From the NCBI GenBank assembly GCA_002269645.1, contig NIVC01003288.1, forward strand, positions 29,517-93,516: 64,000 nucleotides of DNA, written 5' to 3'. The translations under genes and the position numbers were made by a program. Of the stretch, positions 23,188-64,000 are shown in pieces (position 1 is the stretch's first letter; each line of letters starts with the position of its first letter). The DNA is from Macrostomum lignano (taxonomy: Eukaryota). Below the pieces are notes generated by a model. It searched no databases. It saw only the letters and a program-made list of their open reading frames with translations, and had not been told where the DNA came from.

Positions 23188-23528
23188 TGTGCTTAACTTG
23201 TGTTTGGAAATTCAAAATACTTATTAAAATTCACCCGTGCAGAACCGCATTTAAATATTCTTAGCGGAGAGGGTAATTATCAGCTAATTGCTTGCAGGTC
23301 AGGTAGAATTTTCTCTCACAATTAAAAATTGCAGGTGCTAATTTTCCGCAGTGATGCAATAATGGTGAAAAGGTTTTCCTCACGTAAGCATTTCCTTAAC
23401 CTCCAAATGTTCCCGGCCGAAACACACAGCTCCACTCCATTGTCGAGATCAATTCGATTCCGAAATTTACGTCTTCCGGCTTCGACTTCCAAAGTCAATG
23501 CCGGAATGATTGCTGCAGGCAAGGATTT

Positions 23529-23987
<459 letters not shown>

Positions 23988-31493: not shown

Positions 31494-31882
<389 letters not shown>

Positions 31883-33078: not shown

Positions 33079-34384
33079 ATGCTCACGGGCGAGTGCTCAG
33101 TCGGAATCGGGAATTTGAGTGAGCCAATCAATGAGACGCTATATTTAAGTAAAAAAGCTCAAGCTGATGAGCTGATATTCCACACCATCTGCATCGTGGT
33201 GGGCTTGGTTGGCCTCGTGCTGAACAGCCTGTCACTTATCGTGTTCGCCAAAGTGTTCTTCAAGTCCAGCAAGCGCAATAACTTTCACCTGTTCTTTCTG
33301 CTGCTGAGCTTCTGCGAAATCACGTTCTGCATCGGCAGCGTGATGACCTACTCAATCCAAATGGTCAGCAATACGGAGCCGTACAGTTGGACCGGGTTCG
33401 ACCCTAGCCTCGGCGAGAAGGTGGACATTAGTTTTTACTCCTCCGTCAACCTGCCAGGCGGCAGCAGCAACGCTGCGGTGGTGCTCTTCGCCGGGGTGGC
33501 CAACCTGTCCAACTACCTGGCCGTGCTGTCGCAGTTCTCGCGCAACTGCTGGGTCGGCATCACCGCCCTGCTGCGCTGCTACATCGCTACTCGACGAACC
33601 AACGTTCAGGTAAGTCGGGCAATGCAGGATGCCTGCCGGATAGCCACCAGCGTATCATTTGTTAATGACTGAATAAATAAACATTTCACAGGTGAATAAG
33701 ATTTACGCCACCAGACGCATACTACTAATGTTCTTCGTGAAGCTCTTCATCATAATCGGGCTGGCCATCGTTCGTACTTACCTAAAGGACCCAGGTAGTT
33801 TTATGCGCATGGAAGTATACATGTGCAATACCAGCGACTGGGTGACCAGCTCTCGGCTGTTGCTGCATATGCCCAATAAGCAGCCAAAGTACTGGAGCCA
33901 CGTGGACATGGGCTGGAACATCCTGGCGCAGTTTATTCCCCTGGTGGTCATCATCGCCAGCTCCGTGATCCTTGTGTTCTCGCTGCGCAACGGGGCCGGC
34001 GTCGGCAGCAGCAGCGCCGAGAGGAACAAGCGGGTCACTCGCATGGTGATCATCTTTGCCATCACCTTCGCGGTGCTGGAGGGCCCGAGGGCCATCGTCT
34101 ACGCTATTCCACGGCATTTGCGCTTGCGCAGACTGCCTCAGGTTACATTTTTTCTGTCGCAAGCGGACTCAATCGTGAACGTGTTCATTTATTTCTTCAA
34201 TGATCAGCACTTTCGGAAGGCTCTGTGCGGAGAGCAACAAGCGAACGGCTCTCGTCAGCCGCGGCCGCCGCAGACGCAGCAGCAACGGGGCTCTTGCGAC
34301 GCCTGCGAGGAGGTTGGCATGCTACCAACCAGAGACAGACGGAAAAGCTCTGGCCTGGAGGGACAGGACCCAGCCGAGGAATAA
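33079..34384 (+). CDS. Rhodopsin-class (class A) GPCR, peptide-receptor-like (exons 33079-33609, 33692-34384)
   Basis: Seven hydrophobic segments; GLVGLVLNSLSL in TM1, LLRCY in place of DRY, FAVLEGP in TM6, NVFIY in place of NPxxY; N-glycosylation sites at the N-terminus; phase-0 intron of 82 bp. Confidence 0.88.
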
Positions 34385-36300
34385 CTCATTTTAGCATCGC
34401 ACGCTAAGCATCGGCTTGCGCAAACAGCGGTACCCGAAAAGCCTGGGAACTTGGTTGGCTGTCCCAGCCTCGCAGGTCCTGGGAGGGCGGTGTGGTGCAT
34501 AATGCATGAAAATTAAACAAAAATGCTTTGCTGTCAATTTTAACTGCCTGGCTTGGACAAACTTTCTCCCCATCCCTACTCTTTCCGCCGCTGTCGTATT
34601 TTCTTTTTTTGCCTCCCCCCACCGCTGCTAGTTTCCAGTTTCCTATAAATTCCCTCCTGAGCATCGGCAAGCGAGCAGCAAAAGAAAATAAGAAGGTAGA
34701 AATTTCTGGACTTGGAATAGAACTCACCCTCAGAAGGTGCGTCCTCACGTGCATACCCGGCGTTCGATTCTCGCTAATTGCACACAACTTTTTTGACACC
34801 TGTGTTTGCTTGTTCGTTCTGTCGGTTAGAATGTCTTTTAGAATGAAATTCGCCAGTTCGGTGTTGACCTACCCGAGTGAAATGTCAATTTGGACAGCCG
34901 GCTGAGGGCTGCCAGGCTAATTTGTTCTTCGATAAGAGTCGGTGACTTTGGCAAAGAAGCAAGACTAACACAGTTTAGCGTAGCTGAGCCACAGCACAGA
35001 TACCTGTGCAAGCTGTCAGCGCATTGAGCCAGTCCGATCTGCACCTTTGTTTTTTAGTCAGTAATTAATTAGCCTGTTCTGTATCACGTCCGACTTTATA
35101 CTTTCTCATCACCAATGGCGCCATCACGCTCTGTTCAATATGCTATACGAGCTTTATTTTGTTTATTTCGAAAACTAGACTGTTGTAGAAATAAAGCCGC
35201 TGCAGATAAGACGCTTACCTGTCGCTGACCAGGTCCTGGCTGGGTCCTGCATGGCCAGCCCGAAAAAGTTGGCATTCGACTTGGCGATTTGTTGAAAAAG
35301 CAGGAGAGGGTGGGGAGGGGAGCAGAAATCCAACTTCAGATGGGCTCCGGCTCTCGATCAAGATTGTGCCTCAGTTGTTCTTTTTCCAATTGCCTTCGTC
35401 AATGTTTGTCCAGTCATTGCCATTCAGAAGTCGCGTGTGTCCGCTGGCCTTCCCTCCCTCTGAGTTGGAATGCTAAATAAAAGACAGAAAAATGGGGAGA
35501 TTTGTGACCGCCTCCGAGCGCTCGGGGACGCTTGCTGGACAGAAATTTCCGCTAACAAACCTGGAAATATTAGAACCCACCTGCTGCCTCGTCTTTACCT
35601 CTCGCTTCACAATTTCTTGGCTTGCCCAGAAATTTCTAGCTCTCAGCCGTGCCCCTCTCTGCTTGCTGCCCGTCAGTTCCCAGATGCCGTTCCTCACCGA
35701 TCTCGGAGCAGCCCCCGTCTGCTGCCTGTCACAAAGAAGCATTCTCAGCTTACTCGGACGAAGAACGAAGTCTCGCTCAGCCTGTCTATTCCTATGCCGC
35801 CGCTATTTCCCCTGCATCATGCGGCGCCTTCGTGTCCAACTGTGCGCCTGGCGTTCCGTCTGGCTAAGGCCGAAGTGTGCGTACGAAGTTCGTAGATAGT
35901 AAATTTCTCTGCGAAGATTTGACAGCTATTAATTCTGATAATCACGCTTCTGTGCCAGGTTCGCAACTCTAAATTTAGTTTAGATAATCTTACAGCCGCT
36001 CAATCAGCGGCTTTGTGTGATAATAGCACCATCCCTACCCATAAAAGACAATGCAAAAGTCAAGCTAAAAACACCGAAGTCCAAATTAAGCTTGACTTTT
36101 CATCCAAAAAGTATCCAAAATTTTGACAGGCGAAAATTTGCGGTGCCACATTACGATTACCATACGACGATTACCATACGATACGATAATATGTTACGAA
36201 AACTTCTAAATATTCTTGTACCAACCTCTGTGTCCCTACCCGGACTCCCCTACTCCCCTTCAGAAACCATAACCTCAGACTCCCGACCCCAAAATCCCCA

Positions 36301-37200
36301 CCCCAGACTCCCTACCCCAGACTCCCTACCCCAGACTCCCCACCCCAGACTCCCTACCCCAGACTCCCTACCCCAGACTCCCTACCCCAGACTCCCTACC
36401 CCAGACTCCCTACCCCAGACTACCCACCCAGACTCCCCACCCCAGACTCCCTACCCCAGACTCCCTACCCCAGACTCCCTAACCCAGACTCCCTACCCCA
36501 GACTACCCACCCCAGACTCCCCACCCCAGACTCCCCACCCCAGACTCCCTACCCCAGACTCCCCACCCCAGACTCCCCACCCCAGACTCCCTACCCCAGA
36601 CTCCCTACCCCAGACTCCCTACCCCAGACTCCATACCCTAGACTCCCTACCCCAGACTCCCTACCCCAGACTCCCTACCCCAGACTCCCTACCCCAGACT
36701 CCCTACCCCAGACTCCCTACCCCAGACTCCCCACCCCAGACTCCCCACCCCAGACTCCCTACCCCAGACTCCCTACCCCAGACTCCCTACCCCAGACTCC
36801 ATACCCTAGACTCCCTACCCCAGACTCCCTACCCCAGACTCCCCACCCCAGACTCCCTACCCCAGACTCCCTACCCCAGACTCCCTACCCCAGACTCCAT
36901 ACCCTAGACTCCCTACCCCAGACTCCCTACCCCAGACTCCCCACCCCAGACTCCCTACCCCAGACTCCCTACCCCAGACTCCCTACCCCAGACTCCCTAC
37001 CCCAGACTCCCTACCCCAGACTCCCTACCCCAGACTCCCTACCCCAGACTCCCTACCCCAGACTCCCTACCCCAGACTCCCCACCCCAGACTCCCCACCC
37101 CAGACTCCCTACCCCAGACTCCCCACCCCAGACTCCCCACCCCAGACTCCCTACCCCAGACTCCCCACCCCAGACTCCCTACCCCAGACTCCCCACCCCA
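36301..37200. repeat. 14-bp C-rich/G-rich minisatellite, about 64 copies
   Basis: Unit CCCCAGACTCCCTA with a CCCCA variant. Confidence 0.97.
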
Positions 37201-38007: not shown

Positions 38008-38175
38008 AGGGGGTGTAGTTAGTGTGTCCGACTCACGACTGAAAGGTCGGGGGATCGATTCTCGACCCACTCGGAACAGTTTGTGTCATTGAGCAAGACG
38101 ATTAACTCTGCATTGCTTTCAGTTCACCCAGCTGTAAAATGGTTGCCAGCATTAGCTGGGGTAATTGAGGGTGAG
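38008..38175 (+). mobile_element. tRNA-derived SINE with CORE-like domain, copy 1
   Basis: tRNA-like head, then GTGTCATTGAGCAAGACGATTAACTCTGC..CAGTTCACCCAGCTGTAAAATGG; homologous to 57895-58050. Confidence 0.75.
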
Positions 38176-45454: not shown

Positions 45455-46904
45455 CAGAACTGTCGAGCTCGAGTCACTATCGTTAACTGGTTGGTTGTAC
45501 CAAACAACCAAGCTTTGTGGTTGGACATAGTACACGATCTCTAATTTGAGGATCTCGGCGTTACGCCAAAGGAGAGGTTCCGAGAGGACTTGGTGCATGG
45601 GTCCTTCGCCGAACTTTTGACCACAAGTTTCGTCCTCCGCAGAGTAGGCGTGAGGCAATTGACCAGCTAGGGGAAATCGAGTAACGAATATTCATTGGGG
45701 CATAAACACAAATACGAGCATGGATACGAGTTTAAGCATTAGTTACGATAAAATGAGCATTGCTTATGAAAATAAACACGACGTCTGTTATGTGTGAAAA
45801 TATTTACACTCCCATTTTTGCCCTGACTGGGACCTGGAAAGCTGCAGCTTCCCAAGGCCTTTAGGCGCGGTGCTCACCGCTCTATACAGGTAAATAGAGG
45901 CGAGACCACAAAATTTGTCTTGATAGATACCCTTTACTAGCTACTCACATGCCGGTTATCAGTAGTATCCTAGGTTCATTTTAAGTAACTGTCTCTCTTT
46001 CATTCGCTGTGTGAACGCATTGTTACCTGAACAAATGATTAGAAAAATTTTCGAAGGTTAAATGGATCAGAAAGAAATTTAGTTCTGCGAATTTAAGCAC
46101 AACTCTAGTTGTGAATGTGCCTTTCATCAACTGCATAATTTTGATACAAGAACGCAAGACGGAAAAGTTAGGGCCTGGTCACTAAAAAACCATCGCAGAT
46201 CCCAAAGAGCATTTTAGCTCTTTATATTGAATCATAAATCATAAATCATAATGCTCAAATTCTCGTGACGCGGCATCCGGAGACGCAGTTGCAACCTCGC
46301 TGACTTTTGCCTGGCTATTAATAGACTTCTGGTGATGCTTTCCTCCTGTAAGCCTTGCCAAGCGCTAAGTGAATGATTTACAGCTAAACGCAACCGAAGC
46401 CGTTTTATTTATAGGGATTTTATCCAGTCGCAGACCGGAATCCCCATTCTAAATCTCTTAATCTGGAAGAAAAGCCGTTGGCCCCAGCCCGGCAGGAAAT
46501 GGGCGTGTTAAACCGATTCCATTCTCAGGGCTGATGGGCAGCCCGTCTGGCCGGGTTAAATTTAGCATGGACTGCCACCAGTTCACTGCTTTCCAGGCCA
46601 TTGTTCGGCCTGGTTTTGCGTGCCGCTCAGCCCAGCGACCCGCGGGTTCAGCTGCCTGGACTGCCGGCTGACTGGCAGACCTGACCGGTGACTGCTGCAG
46701 GTCGCGTGACCTCTGACGACCATGATGCGGAGGAAGTTTGAGAGCAGACTTGTCAGCGCAGTGTCGCGGGAGTGGATTCTTTTTCTAAAGTATCTCAGTG
46801 CTTTTGCAGCTTCAAGAAATAACTGCGGCCAGCCTCTGGGCACCTTGCGGATGCAATCTTCAGCTCGACCCTTGGAACGCTAGCTTTCAATGGTGGCTAT
46901 TTCT

Positions 46905-48055
46905 CCTCTCATCTTCTCATCTCTCATCTCTCATCTCTTCGAGTCTCATCTCTTCCAGTCGCATCTCTTCCAGTCGCTTCTCTTCCAGTCTCATCTCTTC
47001 CAGTCTCATCTCTTCCAGTCTAATCTCTTCGAGTCTCATCTCTTCCAGTCTCATCTCTACCAGCCTCATCTCTACCAGCCTCATCTCTACCAGCCTCATC
47101 TCTACCAGCCTCATCTCATCCAGTCTCATCTCATCCAGTCGCTTCTCTTCCAGTCTCATCTCTTCCAGTCTCATCTCTTCCAGTCTCCTCTCTTCCATTC
47201 TCATCTCTTCTAGTCTCCTCTCTTCCATTCTCATCTCTTCCAGTCCCATCTCTTCGAGTCTTATCTCTTCTAGTCTCATCTCTTCGAGCCTCATCTCTAC
47301 TGCAGTCTCATCTCTTCCAGTCTCATCTCTTCGAGTCTTATCTCTACTGCAGTCTCATCTCTTCCAGTCTCATCTATTCCTGTCTCATCTCTTCCAGTCT
47401 CCTCTCTTCCATTCTCATCTCTTCCAGTCCCATATTTTTGAGTCTCATCTCTTCCAGTCTCATCTCTTCGAGTCTCATCTCTACTGCAGTCTCATCTCTT
47501 CCAGCTTCATCTCTTCCAATCTCAAATCTTCCAGCCTCATCTCTTCCAGTCTCATCTCTACCGGCCTCATTTCTTTGAGTCTCATAATCTCTTCGAGTCT
47601 CATCTCTTTTAGTCTTATCTCTTCGATTCTCATCTCTACCGGTCTAATATCTACCAGCCTCATCTTTTCCAATCTCATCTCTTCCAGTCTCATCTCTTCT
47701 AGTCTCATTTCTACCAGTCTCATCTCTACCAACCTCATCTCTCCCAACCTCATCTCTACCAACCTCATCTCTCCCAACCTCATCTCTTCCAACCTTATCT
47801 CTCCCAACCTCATCTCTACCAACCTCATCTCTTCCAATAACCTCATCTCTTCCAACCTCATCTCTTCCAACCTCATCCCTCCCAACCTCATCTCTCCCAA
47901 CCTCATCTCTTCCAGTCTCATCTCTTCCAACCTCATCTCTCCCAACCTCATCTCTTCCAGTCTCATCTCTTCCAACCTCATCTCTCCCAACCTCATCTCT
48001 CCCAATCTCATCTCTTTCAACCTCATCTCTTCCAATCTCATCTCTTTCAGTCATC
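46905..48055. repeat. 15-bp pyrimidine-rich degenerate satellite
   Basis: Unit TCTCATCTCTTCCAG drifting to TCTCATCTCTCCCAACC-type variants at the 3' end; it explains the LISSS and EEMRL ORFs. Confidence 0.95.
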
Positions 48056-48595
48056 TCTCCGCTAGTCTCCTATCCTCTGTCTCATATCCTTCAGTCTCAA
48101 AAAGAATCCACTCTCATTTGCTGTCTCCTTTTGTCTTTTCTTCACTCTTCTTGGACCCGTCTCCCGCAGTTCCTCATCTTTACTGCCATCGTATCTCCTC
48201 TTGTCCCCCTGTCGTTTTGTCCGGACTCTAATCTCTAATCTCGTTTCTTTTCATTTCTCTTCTCATGTGGATGCCTCTTCTCTTCTTGCTTACTGTAGAA
48301 CAACATATTAAAATAAATTTGGAATTCCAAAACTATATTAAGAATTTGAGTAGACAGAATTATCATATATTTAAATTGATACACAATAAAACCAAATACA
48401 AAAATTAAGGTGGGATATGAAGCCTGAAGATGTTTTTCAAACCATTTTTTGATCGAAATTCTTTCCTAGCAGAGTGTAGGGTTCCTCATCCGTTCTCTCA
48501 TTACGCTACTCCCCCTCTAGCGCACGAACCCAGCCAGTCAGTCTTGTTGACCTTGGCAACCCGCTCGTGTTGTGGTTGGTTACAAACTCCAAGCC

Positions 48596-53200: not shown

Positions 53201-53596
53201 GTGGAGAGGATGGTGAAGAGTCTGCAGCTGCTCACCGACCGTTTAAAGCGCCAGTACGAGCAGCGCCAGCGCCGGAAGCGGGTCGATCAGCAGCGGCGCG
53301 GCTTCGGCGGCTGCAGCTGGGAAAACTCGATGCCGGCCGCCCGCATGAAGGCGGAGATTCGCCAGGCGCAGGCGCGGGCCACGTGTCTGCGCAACTGCCT
53401 GCGAGCCGCGCTCGGCAGCGGCGGCGCCTGCGGTCCTCGCGGCCCCGCTGGCTGCGCAAGTGGCGACGGACCGGCAACCGCCGCTGTCGGCTGCAGACAT
53501 CGGGGAGTCGCTACAGAGCAGGCCAGAGATCCCATCACCGACATCAAGTGCAAATACGAGCGCTGCCTGCTGTACAGCCGCTACGATGTCAAGTAG
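50269..53596 (+). CDS. Orphan low-complexity/coiled-coil protein, about 440 aa (exons 50269-50349, 50464-50872, 50975-51401, 53185-53596)
   Basis: Four GC3-rich segments joined by GT-AG introns with compatible phases 0, 1, 2; A, Q, G and R tracts. The exon 2 acceptor is weak. An in-frame ATG also exists at 50221. Confidence 0.6.
51635..53145. repeat. 16-bp satellite with a 638-bp higher-order repeat, intronic
   Basis: Unit TTAGGATGGAGTGACA; the order of variant units from 51761 recurs from 52399. Confidence 0.95.
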
Positions 53597-53876
53597 GAAT
53601 GGGATGGGATGGGATGGAATGGGATGGAATGGGATGGGATGGGATGGGATGGAATGGGATGGGATGGGATGGGATGGAATGGGATGGGATGGGATGGGAT
53701 GGGATGGGATGGGATGGGATGGGATGGAATGGGATGGGATGGGATGGGATGGGATGGGATGGGATGGGATGGGATGGGTTGGGATGGGATTGGATGGGAT
53801 GGGATGGGATGGGATGGGATGGGATGGGATGGGATGGGATGGGATGGGATGGGATGGGATGGGTTGGGATGGGATG
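53597..53876. repeat. (GGGAT)n microsatellite
   Basis: About 55 units beginning directly after the TAG stop at 53596. Confidence 0.97.
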
Positions 53877-55609
53877 AAGATGATAAAAAGTGAGATCAGA
53901 TCGGACAAGCATTTATGCGATGAGATTAAGCGGTATAAGTTTTGATTCTGATTGAATGCAAGCATGGGATAAGCCTGCATGGGATCATGGGAAGCATCGA
54001 TGTCATCTTGCCCCGCCACTGCTCCGTCGCACTCCAGCTGGCCCTTTCTGCACATCATCGCCCCCACGCCGCCAATATTCGTTGACCCAATCTGCTGCGA
54101 GAATGACTGACCCCAGCAATTTCCAGTCAGAGCAAGCGGCCAAGATCTATTGACATTTTTCTCAGGTTTGAATTCTCGTGCGAACATTTTTTTGCTTTCG
54201 TATCTCTGCCCGAGTTCCTGTGTTATTTTTCCCGGAGACGGCTGCTTTTATTTGATGCCCTGTCCGCCTTTCCCGATCGCAGTACTTTAAATCATAAATT
54301 GTACATCGCTCAGTACAGCACAGACCGGTTCTGTCCATTGCGTCTCCGGCAGAAGATAACTAACTGACTTTCGTATCCGTGTACAGAAGTGCGGTTCCGC
54401 TGTAATGTAAGACATTTTTTGCTTGAAAATTACCTTTCAGTGAAGACCCCCTTCTCTGCTCAAGGCGACCAAGTCAGTGCTATATTATTCAGATTCAATG
54501 CAACTTTGGACTTTGGGACTTTCTTACTTCAGTTTAAAACGAATTTATTGAATTGAGTAGTATGTACAGCTTTTAACGGATCAATAATTCAGAGCTGATA
54601 GAAAACAGGTAACTTTTACAGGCAGCAAGCAGAATGGACGGAAGCAAAGTAGCTAGCATTAAATTAGTGTAACCATACTTTTGAACTGCAGACTAAAGAG
54701 AAACTTCTACCGGATGAGGCTGGCAAGCAAAGTGCTGGCAAAATTTCAGTTTTCCCTGCCTTCTCAATGTTTCTTTTGCCGAATCGATTTTTTTTCATGG
54801 CCAATAATAAATCTTTCTTTAAACTTTATCTAGACAGACCTGTACATCAGCCCTAAAGACACAATGCTGGCTCCATTTGCAAATTGAAGTTCAGAAACTG
54901 AGATACTCACGTACATTTGGTGCATTCAGTGCTCAAACACTGACAATTTCCTACTCGCTAATGCAGTTTGCGGTGATATTATAGTATCTGTCTGCTTGAG
55001 CTTTTCAGGAGTGCGTCGAGTGCTTTTGCCGTAGACCCACAAGTTTGAGTTCTTGAATCACATTCTCGTTTCATTGTCGGCTGATTTTCCATGCAGGAAT
55101 GGCATTCTTGCACTCTTTTGCGTGCAGGAATGGATGTCTATGGTAAAATCTCACTGAAAAAGCATTAGGCGCAGAAATGCATTCCTGCACGGTTTTGTGC
55201 ATTCCTGCACGATGAATCATCCGACAATGGAATTCCTTCACGTTCACTCGTGCGTGAAGGACATCGTGCACTCGTGCGCTAGCGCGCACTCGTGCATATG
55301 TCATTCCCGCACTCGTGACCGTGCAGGAATATATCATTCTGCGTGTGTTAATGATGTTTTGCCATAGAAATAAGCAATTCTGCACGATTGAGCCAGGGAC
55401 TTACGAGCTACTCAAATCGAAGGACGTAAACCTAGGTATCTGGGAAAATTTTAGAAGGCAGGTTTTTACAGAAAAATACATTATGGAGATAGGAGGTTTT
55501 CATTTTTTCAGCACAAAAATTGCTATTGCTTTTGCTAGAAGGGAGACCCAGTGTAGGCAGACGAGAATGTGTGATCAAATGTGACACTCCGCGGACATGC
55601 ACGGCTCGT

Positions 55610-56150: not shown

Positions 56151-57760
56151 TGCAAGTTAGGAATTGAATAATAGGAACACAGAAAACTCTTTAAAAAATT
56201 GAAATCAACTATGAGTGAGAATAATATTGTAACTTACGCGCTAAAGTCATAGTTCTCCATGAAAAGGGAATTTTTATTGAAAAGAATGCATTGCAGGCTA
56301 GACAGTGGCGGAGCATTTAAAGATTTTTTTACAACCGAGTCTCAATAAATAGTTGATTCAGCCAATTAGTTGTGAAATTATAGGCTGTAAACAGCACAGG
56401 AGGCGTGTGCAACCATCGTTTGAACACAGCGAATGCTCCTGGGTGCTATTTTTAGATATGCTAGGCACACAGCTGAGTCACACTCACTCTTGTTGACGGC
56501 GAAGCACGCAGGTGAAAGAATGCCAACTCCATTTCCTGAGATTCTCAGGATTCGCTTCTACTGATAAACTATCTTTATTATTGTGCCAGCAGCTCTGTAA
56601 GCATGTTTATTTCTCACTATTAGCTGACTTCAGCAGTATATGCCGCAAAAACCTGCTGAGACAGAATCTGGCTTCAAGAAAGTTTAGAGCGAGTTAAATT
56701 GGAAACAACTGGGCATTTTGATCGTTGCCGATGGAAAACAACACGGGGGAAATTATTGACACAAAGAAATCGACACGAGGTGGTGTCAGTTTTCAGCTAG
56801 AAATTGATAGTTTCTGACAGCAAAAATCGCGATGTCAGAGTTAAACAGCTGTCGGATGGCTGCTTTTCGCCTATTTCTACATGTACACTGCATTGGAAGC
56901 ATGGCCTAAAGCAGATTCAGAAATCGCACAGTATTTAGACTTGGAGTTATTCAAGACTTTACACTTATCCAACAGATGTATAGCCAAAGTAAAAGCCGTA
57001 CAGGAAAAGCGAGATTGTACTTCTATCCCGCTCAGCCTGCACCAAAGTCAACAGTGAATTCACTCGCTGTTGGAGTCTCTAACTCTTTCTCGAAGGCACT
57101 CGTGGCAAAATTGAGCTGTACCACGTAGCCGTAGCCTTCCAAAATCTCGCGCAACGACAAGAATAGAGTTCAGCTTTGTAGCCACTGAAACCTGATCTCC
57201 AGCTGAAAGCTTCCGTTTTTTTAACTGAGCAATCAGTTTCTGCAACTGTCGGAAAATTCTTTGGGGAAAAACCGACCTTGATTTTTTGAGAAACTTTTTG
57301 TCTATTCTTTCAAATGAAGCCGGGCATTGAATGGCCGGCGAAAATATCCGAGTTTAGCGTTTTGTTTTTTACAACTCTTCGGATCAAATGCCCTGCGAGT
57401 GTGCAAAACCTGGGCAACAAGCATATCGATTTGATCTTGGCTGACTCTGCAGAAGAGAAAGGCGCTGTGGGGGTGGGGCTCGAGTGACGCAGGACTTCGC
57501 AGCTGACACGGATCTGATTCCACAGCTCAGCAGATTTTGCTCCAAATAAATTCCCGGCCCCGCAGAGCGACTGCGATTTCTGTGGTCCCCTTCAGAACTT
57601 CTGCTTTCAAAACTGTTGTCTTCAAAACTTTCGTTCTCAAACTGCAGGGCTGGACGCATTGGTGAGTGGTGATTGTCTTTTCTAGCGATTCCACGACTAG
57701 CACACCTAGTTTACAGAATCTTAAGCGGAACTCAACCTCGGATTGCTTTCAGATTACAAG

Positions 57761-60700
57761 ATGCGTCTCGCACTGCTACTCCTCAGTGCTCTTCTATTTG
57801 TGACTGTCTTCTGCGAGCTTGCCGATGCTCGTCAAGGCAAAAGGTGAGCTAAAAGCTAAGGTTGATTTTGTAGATATAACCTTTTCAAGGGATTTTAGCC
57901 TAGTGGTTTACAGCGTCGGACTCACGACTTATAGGTCGGGGGTTCGAGTCCTGAACTTTGTGTCCTTGAGCAAGAAACTTAACTCTGCATCGCTTCAGTT
58001 TACCCAGCTGTAAAATGGGTGCCAGCATTAGCTGGGGTAATTGAGGGTCTTTGGATTAAACAGCCATTACACAGCCTTCAGATGCGCCGCGCAATAGCTG
58101 AGGCTGTGCTGTCGGTTGCGAATCTGGCCCAATTTGGGCAGGTGTAATTAATCGTTATTATTATTACTACTATTAGTATTATTTTTATTTTATTATCGTA
58201 GAGAAAACAGCTATCATTGCAAAAATTGTCGCCTCGGTCGTCGCGTATCAGGCAGTCACAATTTCTCGAGTTCACATTTATAAGGGGTCACCTTTTTATT
58301 TTTTTGTAAAAAGGTGAAATCGAGGAAAATCGGGAAATCGCTGCCTAAGTAGCCGTTAAAACCTCGGAGAGTGAACAAGCGAACCAAATGCGCATCGTCC
58401 CATCTTGCAGCAGAAGCATGCGCAGCTACTACAAGCGCATGCGCAGCAGCATGGTTAAGCTGAAAGGCCTGTCCTACAGTCGGACTCGCAGGGCCGCAGC
58501 CATGCGCGGCCGCAAAGCCCGGGTCAGATGGGCCCGCCGCTTGAAGGCCCGGCGAGTGCGACGAGCGGCGATTCGATATCGCGTCACTCGCGTCAGCCGG
58601 CGGATACGCAGGACCAGCTCGGTGGTGCGGCGGTCTCGAGTGACCAGCAGAGCGCGGGTCAGACGGGTCGCTAGGCGATCCAGCTACTCGCGCTGCAAGC
58701 TGGCTGCCACTCGCTTCGTCTCCTGCACCAGGCGGCTGTACACTCGCTGCCCTGCTGGCTACAAGCGCAGAGGCAACATGTGCTTCCGGGTCTACTGTCC
58801 GAAGCCGTACGTCCGTCGGGGAGCAAAGTGCGTCCGTTACAGACGCGTTGTTGCTCGCCGGATGGCCTGCCCTCGCGGCTTCACCCGCTACGGCAGCCGA
58901 TGCGTCCAGCGGCTTGGACTGGCCTGCAGCGCCGGCTACCGTGTCTACAAGGGCCGCTGCCACCTGGTCCGCTGTCCTGCCGGGTTCACCAAAATTGGCA
59001 ACAGCTGCCGCAAGAGCTGCCGGAAAGGCTTCACTCTGAAAGGCTTCACTTGCGTCCGAATCCGGACCAGATGCCCCAAGAACTACTACCGCGTTGGTGC
59101 TCGGTGTGTGCGCTATCGCAGCGGTCGGGCAAGGTAAGAATTTAACTGAATCCATCTGGTTGCCTCTAAAAGTAAAATATCAGTTGCTTTTAACTCTCAA
59201 TACCATTGTTGCAACATTTCAGATGTCGATCTGGTTATAAGAGAAAAGGCAGCAAGTGTATTCGCATATTAAAATCTTGCCCGCGCAACTACAAGCGGCG
59301 GGGTAAGCGCTGTGTCCTTACCTGTCCTAGTGAACGGATTCCAAGGCGAACAAGAGACGGTCGCGTTCGTTGTGTCGTTGTGGTATCCAGGTGCCCTGTT
59401 GGCTACAAGATGAAACGGATCCGAACGCGTCGTGGCTATAGGTAAGTGACATTGTTGGGACTTTGTCGCCTCAGAAAATCTGGAACAGAAATACATCACA
59501 TCTGTAATTAATCTATCTACACCTAATCTAGAATCCAGTGCACAATGAACAGCGGCAGCTGCGCTAAAGGTTTCCGCAAGATCAGACGCTATAAACGCGG
59601 CTACTCCTGCGTGAGGATCGCTTGTCCAAAGAACTACGTGAAGCGCGGTAGCGCATGCGTTTATCGCTATAAAAAGCGTCGTCGATGCCCCAGCGGCTAC
59701 ACTCGGATGGGATCCACGTGTCGGAGGATCCGCTGCCCCGGAGGCTATGTAAGGCGCGGCAGTCGATGCGTTTTCGTTCGGTGTCCAAGTGGCTACAGGC
59801 GAGCTGGTCGCATGTGCGTCAGGACAAGATTCGTTAAAACCTGCCCATCTGGCTGGGTGCGACACGGCAAGCTTTGCAGGCGGTTGATTTGCCCCTCTGG
59901 CTACAAAAAGGTCGGCCAGTACTGCATTAGTAAGTAGCAAACTCGACAAGACATATCTAAGCGTTACTTCTAAACCAAAACAAAGGAACTAAAGTGACTT
60001 ATCTCTTACTCCTCCAGACAACTCATGTCCCTCCGGTTTCGTGAGAAGGCGACGCATGTGCGTGCGAAGTAAGTTCCATTTAACAATTGTACAACTGCAA
60101 AACTTTAGGCAGCGGGAACTGCTGCAATAACAATTAGTCATTCAATTATTCACTTTCAGCTCACTGTACAGCTGGATACAAGAAGAAAGGAAAGCTATGC
60201 GTTCGTAAGTAAAAAAAGCTAAACTTCGAATCTCAGAACTATGAGATATAAATTATTCAATGCAATTTGCTTTCTACGAGTATATTCCAAAATTTTCAGG
60301 GAATTGTCCGAAAGGCACAAAAAAATCTGGACGATTCTGTGTCAGAATGAGATGCCCAAAACGTTTTCGACGAGTAGGAAAAAGTTGCGTCCGAAGTAAG
60401 CACTCATTAAATAAATGTTCGAAAGTGCTGTGAAATGCAGAGAGCATCTTAAGATACCAGCTTATGCAAAATCTGACCTTCCAGCAAAATGTCCCAGTGG
60501 TTACGCTAAGCGATATGTCCGACAGAAAGTCTACACAGGGCGCAAAGTCTCCGGATCAGTGAGAAAGTGCAGCTGCATCGGAGCCAAGACTGGCAAGAAA
60601 CCGTCCAAAAAGAACGCCATCGACATGGCATTCGTGGTCGACGTGACCGGCAGCATGGGATCGGTGATCCGCGCGATCAAGGCCAAGATCCGCGAGGTTA

Positions 60701-61058
60701 TCAATGCGAACGCTAAGTCGCGCATCGTAAGTGGTTTTCAATCTAAATTTCAGAGCCCTAAATAAAGAAGACCAATTTTCTAACATGACAAACGAAACGC
60801 TACCTGGCCATTTCAGGTAAACAAATTCGTGCTTGTGCCGTACGGCGATCCGAAAGTTGGTCCAGTGACGGCGACTCGTGCGAGATCTCGCAGCTCCGTG
60901 AACTCCCTCATCAGAGCAGTGAACGCAATGCGCGCATCTGGCGGAGGCGACTGCGCCGAGTTCGGCTTCTCGGGAATATACGAAGCGCTGACCAGAGTAA
61001 AGAAGAACTCAATTGTGTACGTGTTCACCGATGCGAGTCCGTCAGCTCGAGACAGACG
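57761..61058 (+). CDS. Secreted Arg/Lys-rich, Cys-repeat protein with a hemicentin/VWA7-type VWA domain (exons 57761-57843, about 58353-59133, 59223-59441, 59532-59929, 60018-60068, 60160-60204, 60300-60395, 60485-60726, 60817-61058; 3' end unresolved)
   Basis: Signal peptide; about 23 C-P-x-G-Y/F-x-R/K-x-G-x-x-C-type repeats; AFVVDVTGSM..FVLVPYGDP.VGPV..GGGDCAE..VYVFTDAS. Phases of exons 2-9 are all compatible. The exon 1/2 junction is not clean. Confidence 0.88.
57895..58050 (+). mobile_element. tRNA-derived SINE with CORE-like domain, copy 2 (in intron 1 of the VWA gene)
   Basis: A box TAGCCTAGTGG 57896, B box GGTTCGAGTCC 57941, then TGTGTCCTTGAGCAAGAAACTTAAC..CAGTTT..CTGTAAAATGGG. Confidence 0.8.
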
Positions 61059-62301
61059 GTGAGCAGACATGGCATGTGTAGCATGCAGTCTTTTGCTGCA
61101 ATACCAAGATATCAGCGGAGAAATATTACGAATCTATGATATGGTCCTTATTAATTTTCAATCAGTACCTAAAGAATAGTCACTTCCGAATATAGTTGAG
61201 CACGAAAAAGCAATTAATAATCAGTTCATGAGTGGAAATACCTCAGATTTCATCTGACGGGGCCCATAGATTCCCACGCAGTAGAAATTAGCCAAGAGTG
61301 CGGCAATTCTTTAATGCTTCTAAGCAATTTAGTTGGCCTTTGAACAGTAAGGAACCGGCAACTCCTTCTCTTTTGTACTGCCGTGGTTGAAAGCATGTTC
61401 TTTAATTGACGCCTCTGATGTCTGAGGGGCTTTCGTTTCCTGGAACCGGGGACCCTGAAGACCCTGAAGCCCAATCGAGAGGATCAACTGCAGATCAAGG
61501 ACTAGGAGAAGGCAACACTTGCAAATCGAGGAAAAATAGTTGAAGGCCGAACATTAAAACTGTCTGTATCTCTGAATCGGTTGCATGTAGTAGTTACTTT
61601 TTTAGCCAGATTGTTCAGATTTTTGTCGCTTACCCAGTAAGACATTAACTTTAGTTTCCAATTAGATGTAGGTGCAAGAAACATCCTGTACAACGGAGAC
61701 ATCCTATATTTTGGTGCGATTGGTATTTAAGTATAAGTTTAGGAAGCAAAATAAAGTAGCCAAAAATCTTAGGCGCAACATTGGTTAGTTCACTACTGGA
61801 CATTACAGAATATACTTAGCCTTGGCATATACCCAATATGACAAAGCAATGTTGGGTTTCTCTCCTATAGTTCAAGAGTAGGCCTGGTTATAAAAATACT
61901 TATACTTTGCAGACGCAAATCGCAATCAGTAAAAAATCTACGAGTAAGTTGAGCAATAAAATAGGCCTAGGCCCATTACAATAATCTCCTATAGTCGATA
62001 AAAATAATTACAAGTAATTTAAAAATTGTAAAGGTGTATTACGCTCGTAATGTATCTGCTGATAACGAGGGAGTGTCGCAATAAAAACTGAGCCGCGAGG
62101 GCGAGGAACACAAAAACGCGTAAAAAAATTAATTTGCGGTAAAACCATCTTAATTAAACCTAAGATGCCTATCAGAAATTATATTTTATATGAGAATTCT
62201 TCTAGCTTAAAGCCCAACTCTCGCTTCTAAAAACAGTCCATTTATCTAGTTCGTATCTTGTGAAAGTGAGATCCAGTGAGCTCCAAGCACTGCAAGTTGC
62301 A

Positions 62302-63470
62302 TCAACCTTTTTTAGCAACTTGAGCCAAAAAGTCGTTTCTAACCCACAGTCCGTCCCATTCGCTGAATGTAGAGATGTTCTTAATTTTGAAGCTCTTCAT
62401 GGACAGCAGGGAGAAGTTTCTCGAGGTCATGAAGCGCGTCACAAACTCGTAATTTTTGGACAATTGCGGTCTGTTACTGAGTTTTTTCCGCCAGAACTCC
62501 ATCTGCAGCGCCATGATGTTGAGCTCTCTAAACAGCTTCTCGCCATTCTTCATGAACAGGTGCTCGCCGGACTCGATGTCCATCTTGATGACCACATTCT
62601 TGGTGCCGATGTGCGCTCGAAGCTCGTCCGCTTTGACAGTGGTCACAGGAACCGTGTCCTCGATTAACTTCGTGACCTGCCGTTTCCAGTCAGCCAATCC
62701 GCCTGAGCCGCTTCCAGCGTTGCAATCCATGCCGTCAGCGTCCCAACTGATCCGCTTGAGCGCCACATCGTCACTGATGAAGCCCCAGAAAAGCTTCAGC
62801 TTGTCGTCAAGCAAGTTCAGCCGCTTCGCTGACATTTGCAGCCTGACCAGTACGCGAATGTTAGCATCGATGGCCACCACGGGATACCCGAGCTCTCTGG
62901 CTTGCAGGCTGTAGATGCTAAGGTTGCTGCCGATATCGAGGAACGTCGCAGAGTTTGTCGGAAACTTCTTTAACAGGTCGAGCATCGTATGAATTGCGCT
63001 ACTTTCCCATTTATTGTATCTTAGAATTAGTCCGGAAATCATGTCCTCCTTGCCGAAGGTGACTATCGGCATTAAAGGGCCGCCCATCGCTCGGGTCACA
63101 TTGGCCAGAGGAGACCCTTGTCTGACAATGGTGTACAACTGCTGCGGTAAGTTCCTGTTCAGCTCGCACAGGGGAAACTTGCCCCTGACTAACTGGTAGG
63201 CCGGCGTCTCCTGACATAGTCGGTGCTTCAGGCTGGGGTTCGTGAAGTCGACATTGCGGAGCTCGTTGAATGGAGGACAGTTCTTTTATCATTTTGACAT
63301 CGCTCAGCGTTGGCAGCGACTCTTCGGCGGTCAGGCTTTTGCTTCCAATGAGATTTAGTTTTGAAGCGGTCAATATTTTGGACCGATAGGTATAGGACTC
63401 CGAAGCGGTGCATTTTTGTTTCCGGGAGACGAAATACGTGACAGTGATTAGCGTAATCGATGGGCATGCC
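62302..63470 (-). CDS. FkbM-family (class I SAM-dependent) methyltransferase-like protein, apparently intronless; 5' end frameshifted and uncertain
   Basis: FLDIGSNLSIYSL..VVAIDAN and VIKMDIES.E..ELNIMALQMEF match the FkbM pattern. The frame is open from about 63290, with a -1 shift at an A-run upstream. Confidence 0.8.
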
Positions 63471-64000
63471 ACAAGAAATAAGTGTATATTTTTTGCATTC
63501 TGTCACTTCAACATTTTTTGCTTTAAATTTGTTTCAAATTTCTCTATCTGCTTACGGTGATGTAGAATTTTATACAGAATTGTATTATTCATTGTATACA
63601 ATAGTGTTGTCTGTCTATCCGAATGTAAAAGCTTTGCTCCGTGCAGATTCTTTGAGCTACTGCGGAACAATGCAGCGCATAACTTACCAAAGTTGTTTCG
63701 AAGGTAGAAAATTGGTAGCGCTGGAAATGTGCACTGTGAAGAGGGACAGACCGATGGAGCCTCTGCTGTAAACGCGTCTGACTGTCCCACCCCACCCCCC
63801 TTTCGGTTCGATTTTGTGCGCCGCGGCATTATTAATTTGGGGTATGTGCTCAAAAATTTGGCAGGGGGGGGGGGGTTGTCGTGCCACTCACACCTACTGG
63901 GGGCCAACCCTAAGGCACAGAGCTCGTCTGGGCTACTAGAAAGTTAGGGCACTTTGTGAGAGCGTGCCTGCATACAATAACCGCGCGCTTGAATCAGACT

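What the first reader, a model, noticed from the sequence alone, without database searches (positions are those of the whole stretch)
57761..61058. Secreted polycationic protein: protamine-like segment, about 23 Cys-paired repeats and a hemicentin-type VWA
After the signal peptide come about 100 aa of Arg/Ser/Ala/Val with no acidic residues, then about 23 repeats, mostly C-x10-C (CPxGYxRxGxxC). Only about two D/E residues occur in some 550 aa, and even the VWA (MIDAS-like DVTGS..TD) is Arg/Lys-enriched. The repeat resembles those of apicomplexan oocyst-wall proteins. Late repeats sit on 45-96 bp phase-1 exons, suggesting exon duplication. I do not recognise this architecture. Extreme K/R-rich secreted proteins act as the cohesive component of the Macrostomum adhesive system, so a glue, mucus, eggshell or antimicrobial role is plausible (inference).
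Basis: partly seen in the sequence, partly recalled or inferred. Interest (0 to 1): 0.8.

Follow-up and report, generated by a model that had tools for sequence, protein, structure and literature searches.

The report
Giant polycationic secreted flatworm protein, 5' part
The region holds the first nine exons of a Macrostomum lignano gene for a very large, extremely positively charged secreted protein built from disulfide hairpins like those of parasite oocyst-wall proteins plus hemicentin-type VWA domains. Nobody has studied this family, although peptides of its sister gene sit unremarked in a published mass-spectrometry table of flatworm footprints.

Summary
Nine GT-AG exons (57761-61058, + strand) encode 699 aa: a signal peptide, a 95-aa Arg-rich acid-free segment, 24 Cys pairs (19 exact C-x10-C, consensus CPxGYxRxGxxC) and the first ~110 residues of a Pfam VWA_4 domain. 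Net charge is about +189, with two D/E in 562 residues.

The organism is Macrostomum lignano.

The window holds only about a quarter of the protein. Overlapping UniProt models, a paralogous locus and a related contig show it continues with the rest of the VWA, a SUEL lectin domain, a second VWA_4, K/R-rich stretches and more hairpins (about 3,000 aa). That continuation is not found in 61059-64000.

A 61%-identical paralog has the same exon layout, saturated synonymous sites, all 33 Cys conserved and no acidic residues in its repeats. Five of its peptides appear in published footprint mass-spectrometry data under a 3,863-aa, pI 12.1 entry.

It is neither Mlig-ap1 nor a hemicentin, COWP or protamine. 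The most likely role, inferred only, is a charge-driven, glycan-binding cohesive scaffold in a secreted material. Tissue and function are untested.

The parts
57568..57661 (+). 5' untranslated exon; the donor GT is at 57662 and the intron runs to 57752
   Evidence: UniProt models P0001 and P0002 begin with a translation of 57568-57660 joined to 57752 onward. The splice sites were read from the sequence. The upstream limit was not determined.
57761..57843 (+). Coding exon 1: start codon and signal peptide MRLALLLLSALLFVTVFCELADA|RQGK; ends in phase 2
   Evidence: The junction ...RQGK-SRSMRSYYK is identical in UniProt A0A1I8GGM8. The paralog has the same signal-exon/intron/basic-exon layout.
57844..58410 (+). 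Intron 1, containing a dispersed repeat at 57915-58048
   Evidence: A second copy lies at 38026-38172 with 82% identity. ARAGORN and Rfam found no tRNA here.
58411..59133 (+). Exon 2: 95-aa Arg-rich acid-free segment (aa 28-122) followed by hairpins 1-8 and the linker after hairpin 8 (hairpin 9, aa 270-281, begins exon 3)
   Evidence: AlphaFold2 (mean pLDDT 64.7) predicts a long helix, then a disordered stretch, then one beta-hairpin per Cys pair. In the paralog this segment is about 330-370 aa of (Arg-Ala)n.
59223..59441 (+). Exon 3: hairpins 9-11 plus the first part of hairpin 12 (C-x18-C, aa 326-345, completed in exon 4). It includes the C-x15-C variant (hairpin 11) and the only two acidic residues of the repeat region
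   Evidence: It aligns with paralog exon L001 10099-10314 at 57% identity.
59532..59929 (+). Exon 4: the end of hairpin 12 and hairpins 13-19; ends in phase 1
   Evidence: 61% identical to L001 10396-10797.
60018..60068 (+). Exon 5: 51 bp, phase 1-1, one hairpin (CPSGFVRRRRMC)
   Evidence: The paralog exon is at L001 10980-11027.
60160..60204 (+). Exon 6: 45 bp, phase 1-1, one hairpin (CTAGYKKKGKLC)
   Evidence: The paralog exon is at L001 11133-11174.
60300..60395 (+). Exon 7: 96 bp, phase 1-1, two hairpins
   Evidence: The paralog exon is at L001 11267-11359.
60485..60726 (+). Exon 8: the last, long C-x25-C hairpin, a CSC motif, and the start of VWA_4 with the DVTGSM motif
   Evidence: Pfam VWA_4; motif check.
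60817..61058 (+). Exon 9: the middle of VWA_4 (GGGDCAEF ... VFTDASP). It ends in phase 2 at a GTGAGC donor. If the donor is not spliced, a TGA stop follows immediately
61059..64000 (+). Intron 9 or a disrupted 3' region of at least 2.9 kb. The next coding exon (KESNVRSLARRKNAQLNFLITG...) is not found here
   Evidence: tblastn of P0001 finds nothing in the window for residues 881-1023. The equivalent intron is about 120 bp in paralog L001 and about 100 bp in L002. There is no DNA similarity beyond the exon end.
62302..63472 (-). Opposite-strand FkbM-like methyltransferase reading frames, lying inside intron 9 or just downstream of the gene. Not part of the protein
   Evidence: ORFs. Pfam PF05050 gives E 0.0017, which is below the curated cutoff. 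The frame breaks near 63285.

Best explanation
WHAT IT IS (shown). The region is the 5' part of a Macrostomum lignano gene for a giant secreted polycation. Its layout is: signal peptide, an Arg-rich segment predicted to be helical, a rod of 24 single-disulfide beta-hairpins, then a VWA_4 domain. Outside the window the protein continues with more hairpins, a SUEL-type lectin domain, a second VWA_4, long K/R-rich stretches and a terminal hairpin array. The whole is about 3,000 aa with about 30% K+R and about 2.4% D+E. It belongs to a Macrostomum family of multi-VWA_4 proteins. At least one member, its 61%-identical paralog, is made as protein and was recovered from substrate footprints.

HOW IT MOST LIKELY WORKS (inferred).
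- After secretion it acts as a charge-driven cohesive scaffold in an extracellular material such as footprint glue, mucus or an egg-attachment coat.
- The disulfide-stapled hairpin arrays give extended, protease-resistant spacers carrying a dense positive surface. This surface binds polyanions (sulfated or carboxylated glycans, glycocalyx) electrostatically, as proposed for Mlig-ap1.
- The SUEL lectin adds specific galactoside/rhamnoside binding.
- The VWA_4 domains, whose DxTGSM...GGGDxxE...TDA motif set is intact, provide protein-protein cross-linking nodes.
- Within the gland cell the charge would have to be neutralised by an anionic partner, as in coacervate-type packaging.

The confidence given covers anatomy and mechanism together: the anatomy is near certain, the mechanism is roughly even odds.
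For: Anatomy.

Organism and near-identical gene models.

Continuation of the protein: the P0001 C-terminus overlaps P0186 (A0A1I8JAD7, 2,245 aa) by 85 identical residues. P0186 has SUEL_Lectin at E 5e-19 and VWA_4 at E 2.6e-37, with K+R 33% and D+E 2.4%. Paralog locus L001 and contig L002 both show VWA, linker hairpins, then a second VWA.

Selection, window versus L001: pS is 0.73-0.83 (saturated) against pN 0.24-0.31; 33 of 33 Cys are conserved; 74 of 93 K/R positions stay K/R; the paralog repeats contain no D/E.

Fold: AlphaFold2 predicts one hairpin per Cys pair. The repeats match the structural wall protein COWP1.

VWA motif triad: present in the window protein and, in the same order, in 72 of the 147 best hits.

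Protein-level evidence: five peptides listed under a 3,863-aa, 457-kDa, pI 12.13 entry annotated 'Gal-lectin + hemicentin-like' in Dataset S2 (footprints) of PMC6410801 map exactly to L001. That entry was seen in two of the footprint runs.

Precedent for charge-based cohesion: positively charged Mlig-ap1 is blocked by heparin, and cationic peptides block release (PMC6410801). GRK-rich ap3 proteins occur in other flatworms (PMC9229212). SUEL-type lectin domains occur among Hydra basal-disc adhesive-candidate transcripts (PMC5080974).
Against: - There are no expression or localisation data for this gene. The gland or cell type is unknown.
- The footprint samples also contain vitellogenin-like and other body proteins, so presence there does not prove deliberate secretion into the glue.
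- No peptide specific to the window copy was found in the stored, truncated tables.
- Published in situ screens assigned only Mlig-ap1 and Mlig-ap2 transcripts to the adhesive glands (PMC6410801).
- In this window the next exon is missing within 2.9 kb, where relatives have a 100-120 bp intron. This copy might therefore be interrupted.
- The structure model is only of moderate confidence (pLDDT 64.7, pTM 0.23), and Foldseek found nothing significant.
- Polyanion binding, metal binding and lectin activity are all inferred from domain types.
Confidence: 0.5

Rival explanations
1. Mucosal defence agglutinin or antimicrobial matrix protein. The polycationic hairpins would bind anionic bacterial envelopes, the SUEL (rhamnose-binding-type) lectin would recognise microbial glycans, and the VWA domains would cross-link the complex into mucus. 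A stronger version is a polyprotein cut into many cationic hairpin peptides.
For: Each 12-residue disulfide-closed cationic hairpin resembles the general design of beta-hairpin antimicrobial peptides (my own knowledge, not tested). A SUEL lectin domain is present downstream. The protein is very basic and secreted. The paralog occurs in material left on surfaces.
Against: Only 1 of about 23 inter-hairpin linkers has a furin-type R-x-[KR]-R site, and 5 further sites lie inside hairpin loops. Release of individual peptides is therefore not indicated. The multi-VWA architecture and the ~3,000-aa size suggest a structural polymer. No antimicrobial family was matched in Pfam or by homology.
Confidence: 0.17
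2. Eggshell or cement (egg-attachment) wall protein. It would be a disulfide-cross-linked and possibly tyrosine-cross-linked structural component, analogous to apicomplexan oocyst-wall proteins.
For: The best named repeat match is the structural oocyst-wall protein CpCOWP1. Mosquito proteins named 'cell wall cysteine-rich protein' share the hairpin. One Tyr or Phe sits in nearly every hairpin. Shell and cement glands and eggshell granules exist in M. lignano (PMC4490696). Egg proteins such as vitellogenin are abundant in the same footprint samples.
Against: COWP1 itself is not basic (K+R 7.6%, D+E 9.3%). The similarity is confined to a short, widespread hairpin motif that also occurs in bacteria and viruses. 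No expression data link this gene to the female organs.
Confidence: 0.15
3. This particular copy is a truncated or interrupted duplicate, or the assembly is broken here, so that it yields at most a 700-aa product ending inside the VWA domain. The functional genes would be other copies.
For: No downstream exon is found within 2.9 kb, whereas the paralog and a related contig have 100-120 bp introns at this position. Read-through of the donor gives an immediate stop codon. An unrelated opposite-strand ORF lies in the gap. UniProt models of near-identical copies show internal duplications, which suggests a complex or mis-assembled locus.
Against: All nine exons are intact, with canonical splice sites and no frameshift. 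The protein differs from P0002 at essentially one residue over the shared exons. Long introns with nested genes are common in animal genomes, and the window simply ends at 64000.
Confidence: 0.2
4. Protamine-like nucleic-acid-condensing protein of sperm.
For: The Arg-rich, acid-free N-terminal segment (34 R in 95 aa).
Against: An N-terminal signal peptide, 24 disulfide hairpins, VWA and SUEL lectin domains are all extracellular features. The size is about 3,000 aa. The paralog's peptides were recovered from footprints.
Confidence: 0.02

Closest known systems
Mlig-ap1, the cohesive protein of the Macrostomum lignano duo-gland adhesive (GenBank MH586844; PMC6410801), and the GRK-rich ap3 proteins of other flatworms (PMC9229212)
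   Same: Same species. All are giant secreted proteins with extreme positive charge, high Cys content, a lectin domain, a von Willebrand-type domain and EGF-related Cys repeats. The proposed action is electrostatic binding to anionic glycans.
   Different: Mlig-ap1 has a C-type lectin domain, vWD-C8-TIL and 17 cbEGF modules flanked by Gly/Arg/Lys low-complexity regions, and lies on scaf1170. The gene here has COWP-like two-Cys hairpins, VWA_4, a SUEL lectin domain and Arg/Ala-rich stretches predicted to be helical. Its paralog carries the locus tag BOX15_Mlig000911g8. The Mlig-ap1 antibody peptide is absent. No adhesive-gland expression has been shown.
Cryptosporidium oocyst wall protein COWP1 and other apicomplexan OWPs
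   Same: Tandem CPxG[FY]xxxGxxC hairpins align unit for unit (phmmer E 3.6e-38, BLASTP E 2e-29). Both are secreted, Cys-rich structural-type proteins.
   Different: COWP1 is not basic and has longer linkers, giving 6-Cys type I units, plus His-rich type II repeats (PMC4514997). It has no VWA or SUEL lectin domain; Pfam sees only cEGF. The hairpin motif also occurs in insects, bacteria and a giant virus, so common descent is not established.
Hemicentin-1 / VWA7-type VWA domain (Pfam VWA_4, PF25106)
   Same: The VWA matches VWA_4 well above the cutoff (99.6 bits in the window; 128 bits for the second domain). It carries the DxTGSM...GGGDxxE...TDA motifs. The nearest non-Macrostomum hit (hagfish A0A8C4NBE1) has VWA_4, VWA7_N and GBD_Hemicentin.
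   Different: There are no Ig arrays, G2F, VWA7_N, GBD_Hemicentin or fibulin modules. The VWA is itself basic (pI 10.4) and is repeated in tandem, separated by CPxGY hairpin linkers. That arrangement was seen only in Macrostomum proteins among the hits examined.
Bacterial and metagenomic polybasic C-x10-C repeat proteins (for example P0025 on a 159-kb bacterial contig, P0009, and P0041 with 54 K-rich hairpins)
   Same: Tandem basic hairpins of the form K/R-C-P-R/K-G-F/Y-x-x-R/K-G-x-K-C with almost no acidic residues (P0025: K+R 27%, D+E 0.4%).
   Different: They have no VWA_4 or SUEL lectin domain. P0025 has a bacterial lipoprotein-type leader and bacterial gene neighbours. Their functions are unknown, and the similarity is probably convergent or reflects a very old shared motif.

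Membership tests
VWA_4 (hemicentin/VWA7-type von Willebrand A domain, PF25106) | Match to the Pfam profile above the gathering score | tested here: met
   E 1.9e-28, 99.6 bits against a cutoff of 27, over aa 586-696.
VWA_4 (hemicentin/VWA7-type von Willebrand A domain, PF25106) | Conserved metal-site-like motifs DxTGSM ... GGGDxPE ... xTDA in order | tested here: met
   DVTGSM ... GGGDCAE ... FTDA at aa 591-692. The same ordered triad is present in 72 of the 147 best library hits. Metal binding itself was not tested.
VWA_4 (hemicentin/VWA7-type von Willebrand A domain, PF25106) | Complete domain (169 profile positions) encoded at this locus | tested here: not met
   Only profile positions 2-108 are in the window. 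The remaining exon is not found up to 64000. It is present in relatives.
Hemicentin (fibulin-6) proper | VWA followed by a long Ig-domain array, G2F, EGF and fibulin C-terminal modules | tested here: not met
   Pfam finds none of these in the window protein or in the 2,245-aa continuation P0186.
Apicomplexan oocyst wall proteins (COWP/OWP) | Significant sequence similarity of the Cys repeats | tested here: met
   CpCOWP1 (P0044): phmmer E 3.6e-38, BLASTP E 2e-29 with composition correction; names.
Apicomplexan oocyst wall proteins (COWP/OWP) | Six-Cys type I units and His-rich type II repeats (as described in PMC4514997) | tested here: not met
   The period here is about 16 aa with 2 Cys. The 699 aa contain only 3 His.
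Apicomplexan oocyst wall proteins (COWP/OWP) | Localisation in a resistant cyst or egg wall | not testable with these tools
   No localisation data are available.
Mlig-ap1 (flatworm cohesive adhesive protein) | Domain set C-type lectin + vWD-C8-TIL + cbEGF array flanked by Gly/Arg/Lys low-complexity regions | tested here: not met
   None of these Pfam families was found in the window protein or in P0186. The description of Mlig-ap1 is from PMC6410801.
Mlig-ap1 (flatworm cohesive adhesive protein) | Identity of locus and sequence (scaf1170; antibody epitope SRKPRRKNRKSRKP) | tested here: not met
   The epitope is absent from the window in all six frames and from all fetched family proteins. The paralog's locus tag is BOX15_Mlig000911g8. 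The Mlig-ap1 scaffold is given. The Mlig-ap1 sequence itself was not available for direct alignment.
Mlig-ap1 (flatworm cohesive adhesive protein) | Expression in adhesive gland cells and a non-adhesion RNAi phenotype | not testable with these tools
   The only indirect evidence is that paralog peptides occur in the footprint mass-spectrometry tables.
Protamines / protamine-like sperm nuclear basic proteins | Small nuclear protein without a signal peptide or extracellular domains | tested here: not met
   The protein has a signal-type leader, 24 disulfide hairpins and a VWA domain.
EGF-like / cEGF domains | Six-Cys EGF fold or a match to EGF-family profiles | tested here: not met
   There are two Cys per unit. 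No EGF-family Pfam match reaches its cutoff (best is EGF_MSP1_1 at E 0.012). COWP1 does match cEGF. Foldseek's best hits, which are not significant, are furin-like, EGFR and TNFR Cys-rich modules (E >= 0.37).
SUEL-type (galactoside/rhamnose-binding) lectin domain proteins, PF02140 | SUEL lectin domain present | tested here: inconclusive
   It is present in the inferred downstream part (P0186/P0039, E 5e-19 and 2.5e-19) but not inside the window. The link rests on an 85-residue identical overlap between gene models.

The most novel reading that the evidence does not exclude
The gene and its paralog encode an overlooked third structural component of the Macrostomum footprint or temporary-adhesion material. 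It would be an Arg-rich polycation built from oocyst-wall-type disulfide hairpins that supplies charge-based cohesion and glycan anchoring alongside Mlig-ap1. It would also be a target of the polyanionic releasing factor and of heparin. If so, a wall-protein hairpin module was re-engineered into a reversible polyelectrolyte glue.
Probability: 0.15. Interest if true: 0.75.

Novelty: new variant of a known kind. Interest (0 to 1): 0.55.

Why it matters
Temporary adhesion in flatworms is currently explained with two proteins in M. lignano and with charge interactions of one polycation (Mlig-ap1). This finding points to a separate family of proteins of about 3,000-3,900 aa with pI above 12. They use a different and more structured way of presenting positive charge: disulfide-stapled hairpin rods, a SUEL lectin domain and tandem VWA_4 domains. 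One member is already present, unremarked, in published footprint proteomics.

If the family contributes to glue, mucus or egg attachment, it would add a testable component to the adhesion and release model and a compact 16-residue cationic hairpin module of interest for biomimetic coacervate adhesives. It also shows that the COWP-type hairpin is not apicomplexan-specific and can tolerate near-total removal of acidic residues. If the family turns out to be an ordinary matrix protein, the result is still a corrected gene model for a poorly annotated locus.

Tried and rejected
- **Solved structures.** Sequence searches for the repeats and for the VWA found nothing useful (E >= 0.25).
- **Fold search.** Foldseek of the AlphaFold2 model against PDB gave no significant match (best E 0.37). 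The ranking of furin-like, EGFR and TNFR modules is only suggestive.
- **tRNA-derived SINE in intron 1.** ARAGORN and Rfam found nothing, but a second copy in the window shows it is a dispersed repeat.
- **Next exon.** tblastn and blastn searches of 61059-64000 found nothing.
- **Literature.** Searches by UniProt or locus identifiers, by Macrostomum plus VWA/SUEL, and by transcript names gave no paper on this gene.
- **Seminal-fluid screen.** The paper and its supplements do not mention VWA or lectin proteins.
- **Window-specific peptides.** Tryptic peptides specific to the window copy were not found in the stored PNAS datasets. Those files are truncated, so absence is not informative.
- **Direct comparison with Mlig-ap1.** The Mlig-ap1 sequence is not held as text, so it could not be aligned.
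- **Polyprotein processing.** Rejected on the scarcity of furin-type sites in the linkers.
- **Chance ORF in GC-rich DNA.** Rejected on splice sites, conservation and the pN/pS contrast.


Full report
**1. The observation**

I read 57000-64000, translated it in three frames and assembled a gene model.
- Nine coding exons on the + strand join in frame through canonical GT-AG introns. They are 57761-57843, 58411-59133, 59223-59441, 59532-59929, 60018-60068, 60160-60204, 60300-60395, 60485-60726 and 60817-61058. Together they encode 699 residues.
- The last exon ends in phase 2, so the coding sequence is not finished at 61058.
- A 5' untranslated exon (about 57568-57661) is implied by two UniProt gene models whose translations start there.
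- Composition is R 141, K 61, C 51 and D+E 13. Between residues 23 and 584 the only acidic residues are E306 and D314.
- The mature part has a calculated charge of +189 and a pI of 11.65.
- Residues 28-122 have 34 Arg, 5 Lys and no acidic residue.
- Residues 123-567 hold 24 consecutive Cys pairs: 19 are exactly C-x10-C and five are variants with loops of 9, 15, 15, 18 and 25 residues. The consensus is C-P-[KS]-G-Y-x-R-x-G-x-x-C.
- Shuffling the same residues gives 1.6 C-x10-C on average (maximum 8 in 10,000) against 19 observed.
- Exons 5, 6 and 7 (51, 45 and 96 bp) are phase 1-1 and carry exactly one, one and two hairpins.
- Pfam places a VWA_4 domain (PF25106, E 1.9e-28) at residues 586-696, but only profile positions 2-108 of 169 are covered.

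The only correction is that 61058 is an exon boundary and not the gene's end.

**2. Organism and copies**

- The protein is 92% and 85% identical (BLASTP local alignment) to two Macrostomum lignano UniProt entries named only 'VWFA domain-containing protein' (A0A1I8GCQ9 and A0A1I8GGM8). It is 61% identical to a partial NCBI protein, BOX15_Mlig000911g8.
- The UniProt models contain skipped exons, a frameshifted stretch and internal duplications. Where they are collinear with the window they differ at essentially one residue: G instead of E306.
- Their junction between the signal exon and the basic exon is the same as mine.

**3. The paralog shows a real, constrained gene**

I fetched the paralogous locus (L001, contig NIVC01003734.1).
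- It has the same exon layout, including the three phase-1 mini-exons.
- Its N-terminal basic segment is not alignable in sequence. It is an uninterrupted frame of about 330-370 residues of (Arg-Ala)n. The property (Arg-rich, acid-free) is conserved while length and sequence drift.
- Over 423 aligned codons, synonymous sites are saturated (pS 0.73-0.83) and non-synonymous differences are 0.24-0.31.
- All 33 aligned Cys are conserved, 74 of 93 K/R positions remain K/R, and the paralog's repeat region has no acidic residue at all.

This excludes a chance reading frame. It also shows selection for the Cys framework and for the charge.

**4. The window holds only the first quarter of the protein**

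- In L001 the exon ending ...TDASPSRRDKR is followed, after about 120 bp, by an exon that completes the VWA. A second VWA_4 begins near L001 position 13290.
- A contig from a Logan assembly of run SRR31628392 (L002; organism not stated by the tool) is 76% identical in protein. It shows VWA, a short run of hairpins, VWA and further hairpins, with an intron of about 100 bp at the same place.
- The exhaustive HMMER search returned M. lignano A0A1I8GDF5 (1,223 aa) and its cluster mate A0A1I8JAD7 (2,245 aa, 'SUEL-type lectin domain-containing protein'). The N-terminus of the latter overlaps the C-terminus of A0A1I8GCQ9 by 85 identical residues.
- That continuation carries a SUEL lectin domain (E 5e-19), a second VWA_4 (E 2.6e-37), long K/R-rich stretches, a block of TNKASETKQK repeats and a C-terminal array of further CPxGY hairpins. 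It has K+R 33% and D+E 2.4%.
- The inferred whole protein is about 3,000 residues.
- In the window none of this is found between 61059 and 64000. That stretch instead carries an opposite-strand FkbM-like methyltransferase reading frame.
- Either intron 9 is unusually long here and the next exon lies beyond the window, or this copy is interrupted. Read-through of the donor would terminate at once at a TGA.

**5. The repeat**

- AlphaFold2 on exon 2, with an alignment of 26 sequences, gave a moderate model (pLDDT 64.7, pTM 0.23). It shows a long helix for most of the Arg-rich segment, a disordered stretch, then one two-stranded beta-hairpin per Cys pair.
- Foldseek against PDB found nothing significant. 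The best non-significant matches were furin-like repeats of R-spondin, the Cys-rich domains of EGFR and IGF1R, and TNFR modules.
- PDB sequence searches were empty.
- By sequence, the best named match outside Macrostomum is Cryptosporidium parvum COWP1 (phmmer E 3.6e-38; BLASTP E 2e-29 with composition correction). The hairpins align unit for unit.
- The motif is not confined to Apicomplexa. It occurs in mosquito proteins annotated 'cell wall cysteine-rich protein', in TraN-like and other bacterial proteins, in a Faustovirus protein and in many metagenomic proteins.
- Most of these are not basic. A few are, including P0025 on a clearly bacterial contig (K+R 27%, D+E 0.4%) and P0041, a 1,846-residue Lys-rich protein with 54 hairpins.
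- COWP1 itself matches Pfam cEGF. This fits the idea that the unit corresponds to the C-terminal hairpin of an EGF module, but the window protein matches no EGF profile above cutoff.

**6. The VWA**

- The motif series DVTGSM ... GGGDCAE ... FTDA is intact. The same ordered triad occurs in 72 of the 147 best library hits.
- The closest non-Macrostomum VWA is a hagfish protein with VWA_4, VWA7_N, Ig_VWA7 and GBD_Hemicentin domains. 'Hemicentin-type' is therefore the right label for the domain, but the protein is not a hemicentin.
- M. lignano has several further proteins with two or three tandem VWA_4 domains separated by CPxGYxRV...C linkers. Some are basic (A0A1I8I8N4, A0A1I8GUE1, A0A1I8JEL7) and one is not (A0A1I8I2M0).

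**7. Published proteomics contain the paralog**

- The supplementary tables of Wunderer et al. 2019 (PMC6410801) list an entry in the footprint dataset (Dataset S2) of 3,863 aa, 457 kDa and pI 12.13. It is annotated with a galactose-binding lectin domain and similarity to hemicentin, and it was found in two runs.
- Five of its peptides map exactly to exons of locus L001 and to nothing in the window: NSIVYVFTDASPSR, NIVNVINVNAK, VGPVTISR, FILVPFADPK and FVISAFNDPK.
- The paralog is therefore translated and is recovered from material left on the substrate.
- Three caveats apply. The same samples contain vitellogenin-like and other body proteins. Three other peptides of the entry are shared with a different fibrillin-like basic protein. 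The window copy's own predicted peptides were not found in the stored, truncated tables.
- Other basic hemicentin-like VWA proteins (pI 10.5-11.75) appear in the pull-down and tail datasets.
- The paper characterises only Mlig-ap1 and Mlig-ap2, which lie on other scaffolds and derive from other transcripts. I found no paper that discusses this family.

**8. How it most likely works**

Shown:
- The protein has a secretion-type leader and only extracellular domain types.
- Its positive charge is extreme and under selection.
- It has a conserved disulfide framework, tandem VWA_4 domains and (in the inferred continuation) a SUEL lectin domain.
- The paralog exists as protein and is found in footprints.

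Inferred:
- The hairpin arrays form extended, stable, positively charged rods that bind anionic glycans.
- The lectin domain adds specific sugar binding.
- The VWA_4 domains cross-link molecules.
- Together they make a cohesive polyelectrolyte network in a secreted material.

This is the mechanism already proposed for Mlig-ap1, where heparin blocks attachment and cationic peptides block release.

I rate the anatomy as near certain and the mechanism at roughly even odds. Which material is involved (glue, mucus, egg attachment or shell) is open.

Rivals are a mucosal defence agglutinin, an eggshell or cement wall protein, and the possibility that this copy is truncated. A polyprotein that releases hairpin peptides is unlikely, because only one inter-hairpin linker has a furin-type site. 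A protamine role is excluded by the leader and the extracellular domains.

**9. Comparison and novelty**

- The gene works like Mlig-ap1 in design but fails every membership test for it that I could run.
- It shares the repeat motif with COWPs but not their unit organisation or composition.
- It shares the VWA type with hemicentin and VWA7 but nothing else.
- The genes are in public databases as uncharacterised predictions, and one relative is in a published mass-spectrometry table. The family, its architecture and its extreme charge have not been described.

I classify it as a new variant of a known kind, namely giant polycationic secreted proteins of flatworm secretions. Interest is moderate at 0.55. 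It would rise if expression or RNAi ties the family to adhesion.

Noticed in passing
window 21590-23187 (-) and 25438-27113 (+): Two divergently oriented genes for CUB + LDL-receptor-A + trypsin-like serine proteases. The 231-aa protease reading frames (21590-22285 on - and 26418-27113 on +) translate to identical sequences, while the CUB/LDLa parts differ. This suggests a recent inverted duplication or gene conversion of the protease exon.
   Followed up: no
window 62302-63472 (-): FkbM-like methyltransferase reading frames on the opposite strand, inside or just after the last intron of the gene studied. A hydrophobic N-terminal anchor is followed by a frame break near 63285. The Pfam PF05050 match is below cutoff at E 0.0017.
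   Followed up: partly
window 57915-58048 and 38026-38172: A dispersed repeat of about 140 bp (82% identity between the two copies). One copy lies in intron 1 of the gene. Its start looks tRNA-like, but ARAGORN and Rfam did not call it.
   Followed up: partly
window 33079-34384 (+): Two adjacent reading frames (197 and 230 aa) with multiple hydrophobic segments that look like the halves of a seven-transmembrane receptor. Not analysed.
   Followed up: no
window 23329-24042, 31377-32020, 36017-36907, 46798-48231, 53243-54187: Long simple or tandem repeats that open spurious reading frames and cause strong GC/AT skew: (TDRQ)n, poly-Val/poly-Ser, a 13-aa PRLPTPDSLPQTPY-type unit, (LISSS)n and (HPIPS)n.
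   Followed up: no
locus L001 8400-9750 (paralog, contig NIVC01003734.1): The paralog's N-terminal basic segment is an open frame of about 330-370 residues made almost entirely of Arg-Ala repeats (ARARARA...). This is several times longer than the 95-aa segment in the window. There is an apparent frameshift near L001 9745 and another near 12324, possibly assembly indels.
   Followed up: partly
PMC6410801 Datasets S1-S3 (not in the window): Besides the 3,863-aa paralog, the tables list several other very basic proteins. Among them are hemicentin-like VWA proteins (RNA1310_3126.1, 1,242 aa, pI 11.75; RNA1310_12097.2; RNA1310_27252.1; RNA1310_17919), a 1,639-aa pI 12.5 galactose-lectin protein and a 3,590-aa pI 11.5 fibrillin-like protein (RNA815_38). 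The main text discusses none of them.
   Followed up: partly
locus L005 6001-7650 (JGI metagenome contig, bacterial): A bacterial lipoprotein-like protein (P0025) whose C-terminal half is about 12 polybasic CPRGFxLRGxKC hairpins with almost no acidic residues. It sits among sigma-54 regulator and PilZ genes and shows that a basic version of this hairpin exists in bacteria.
   Followed up: partly
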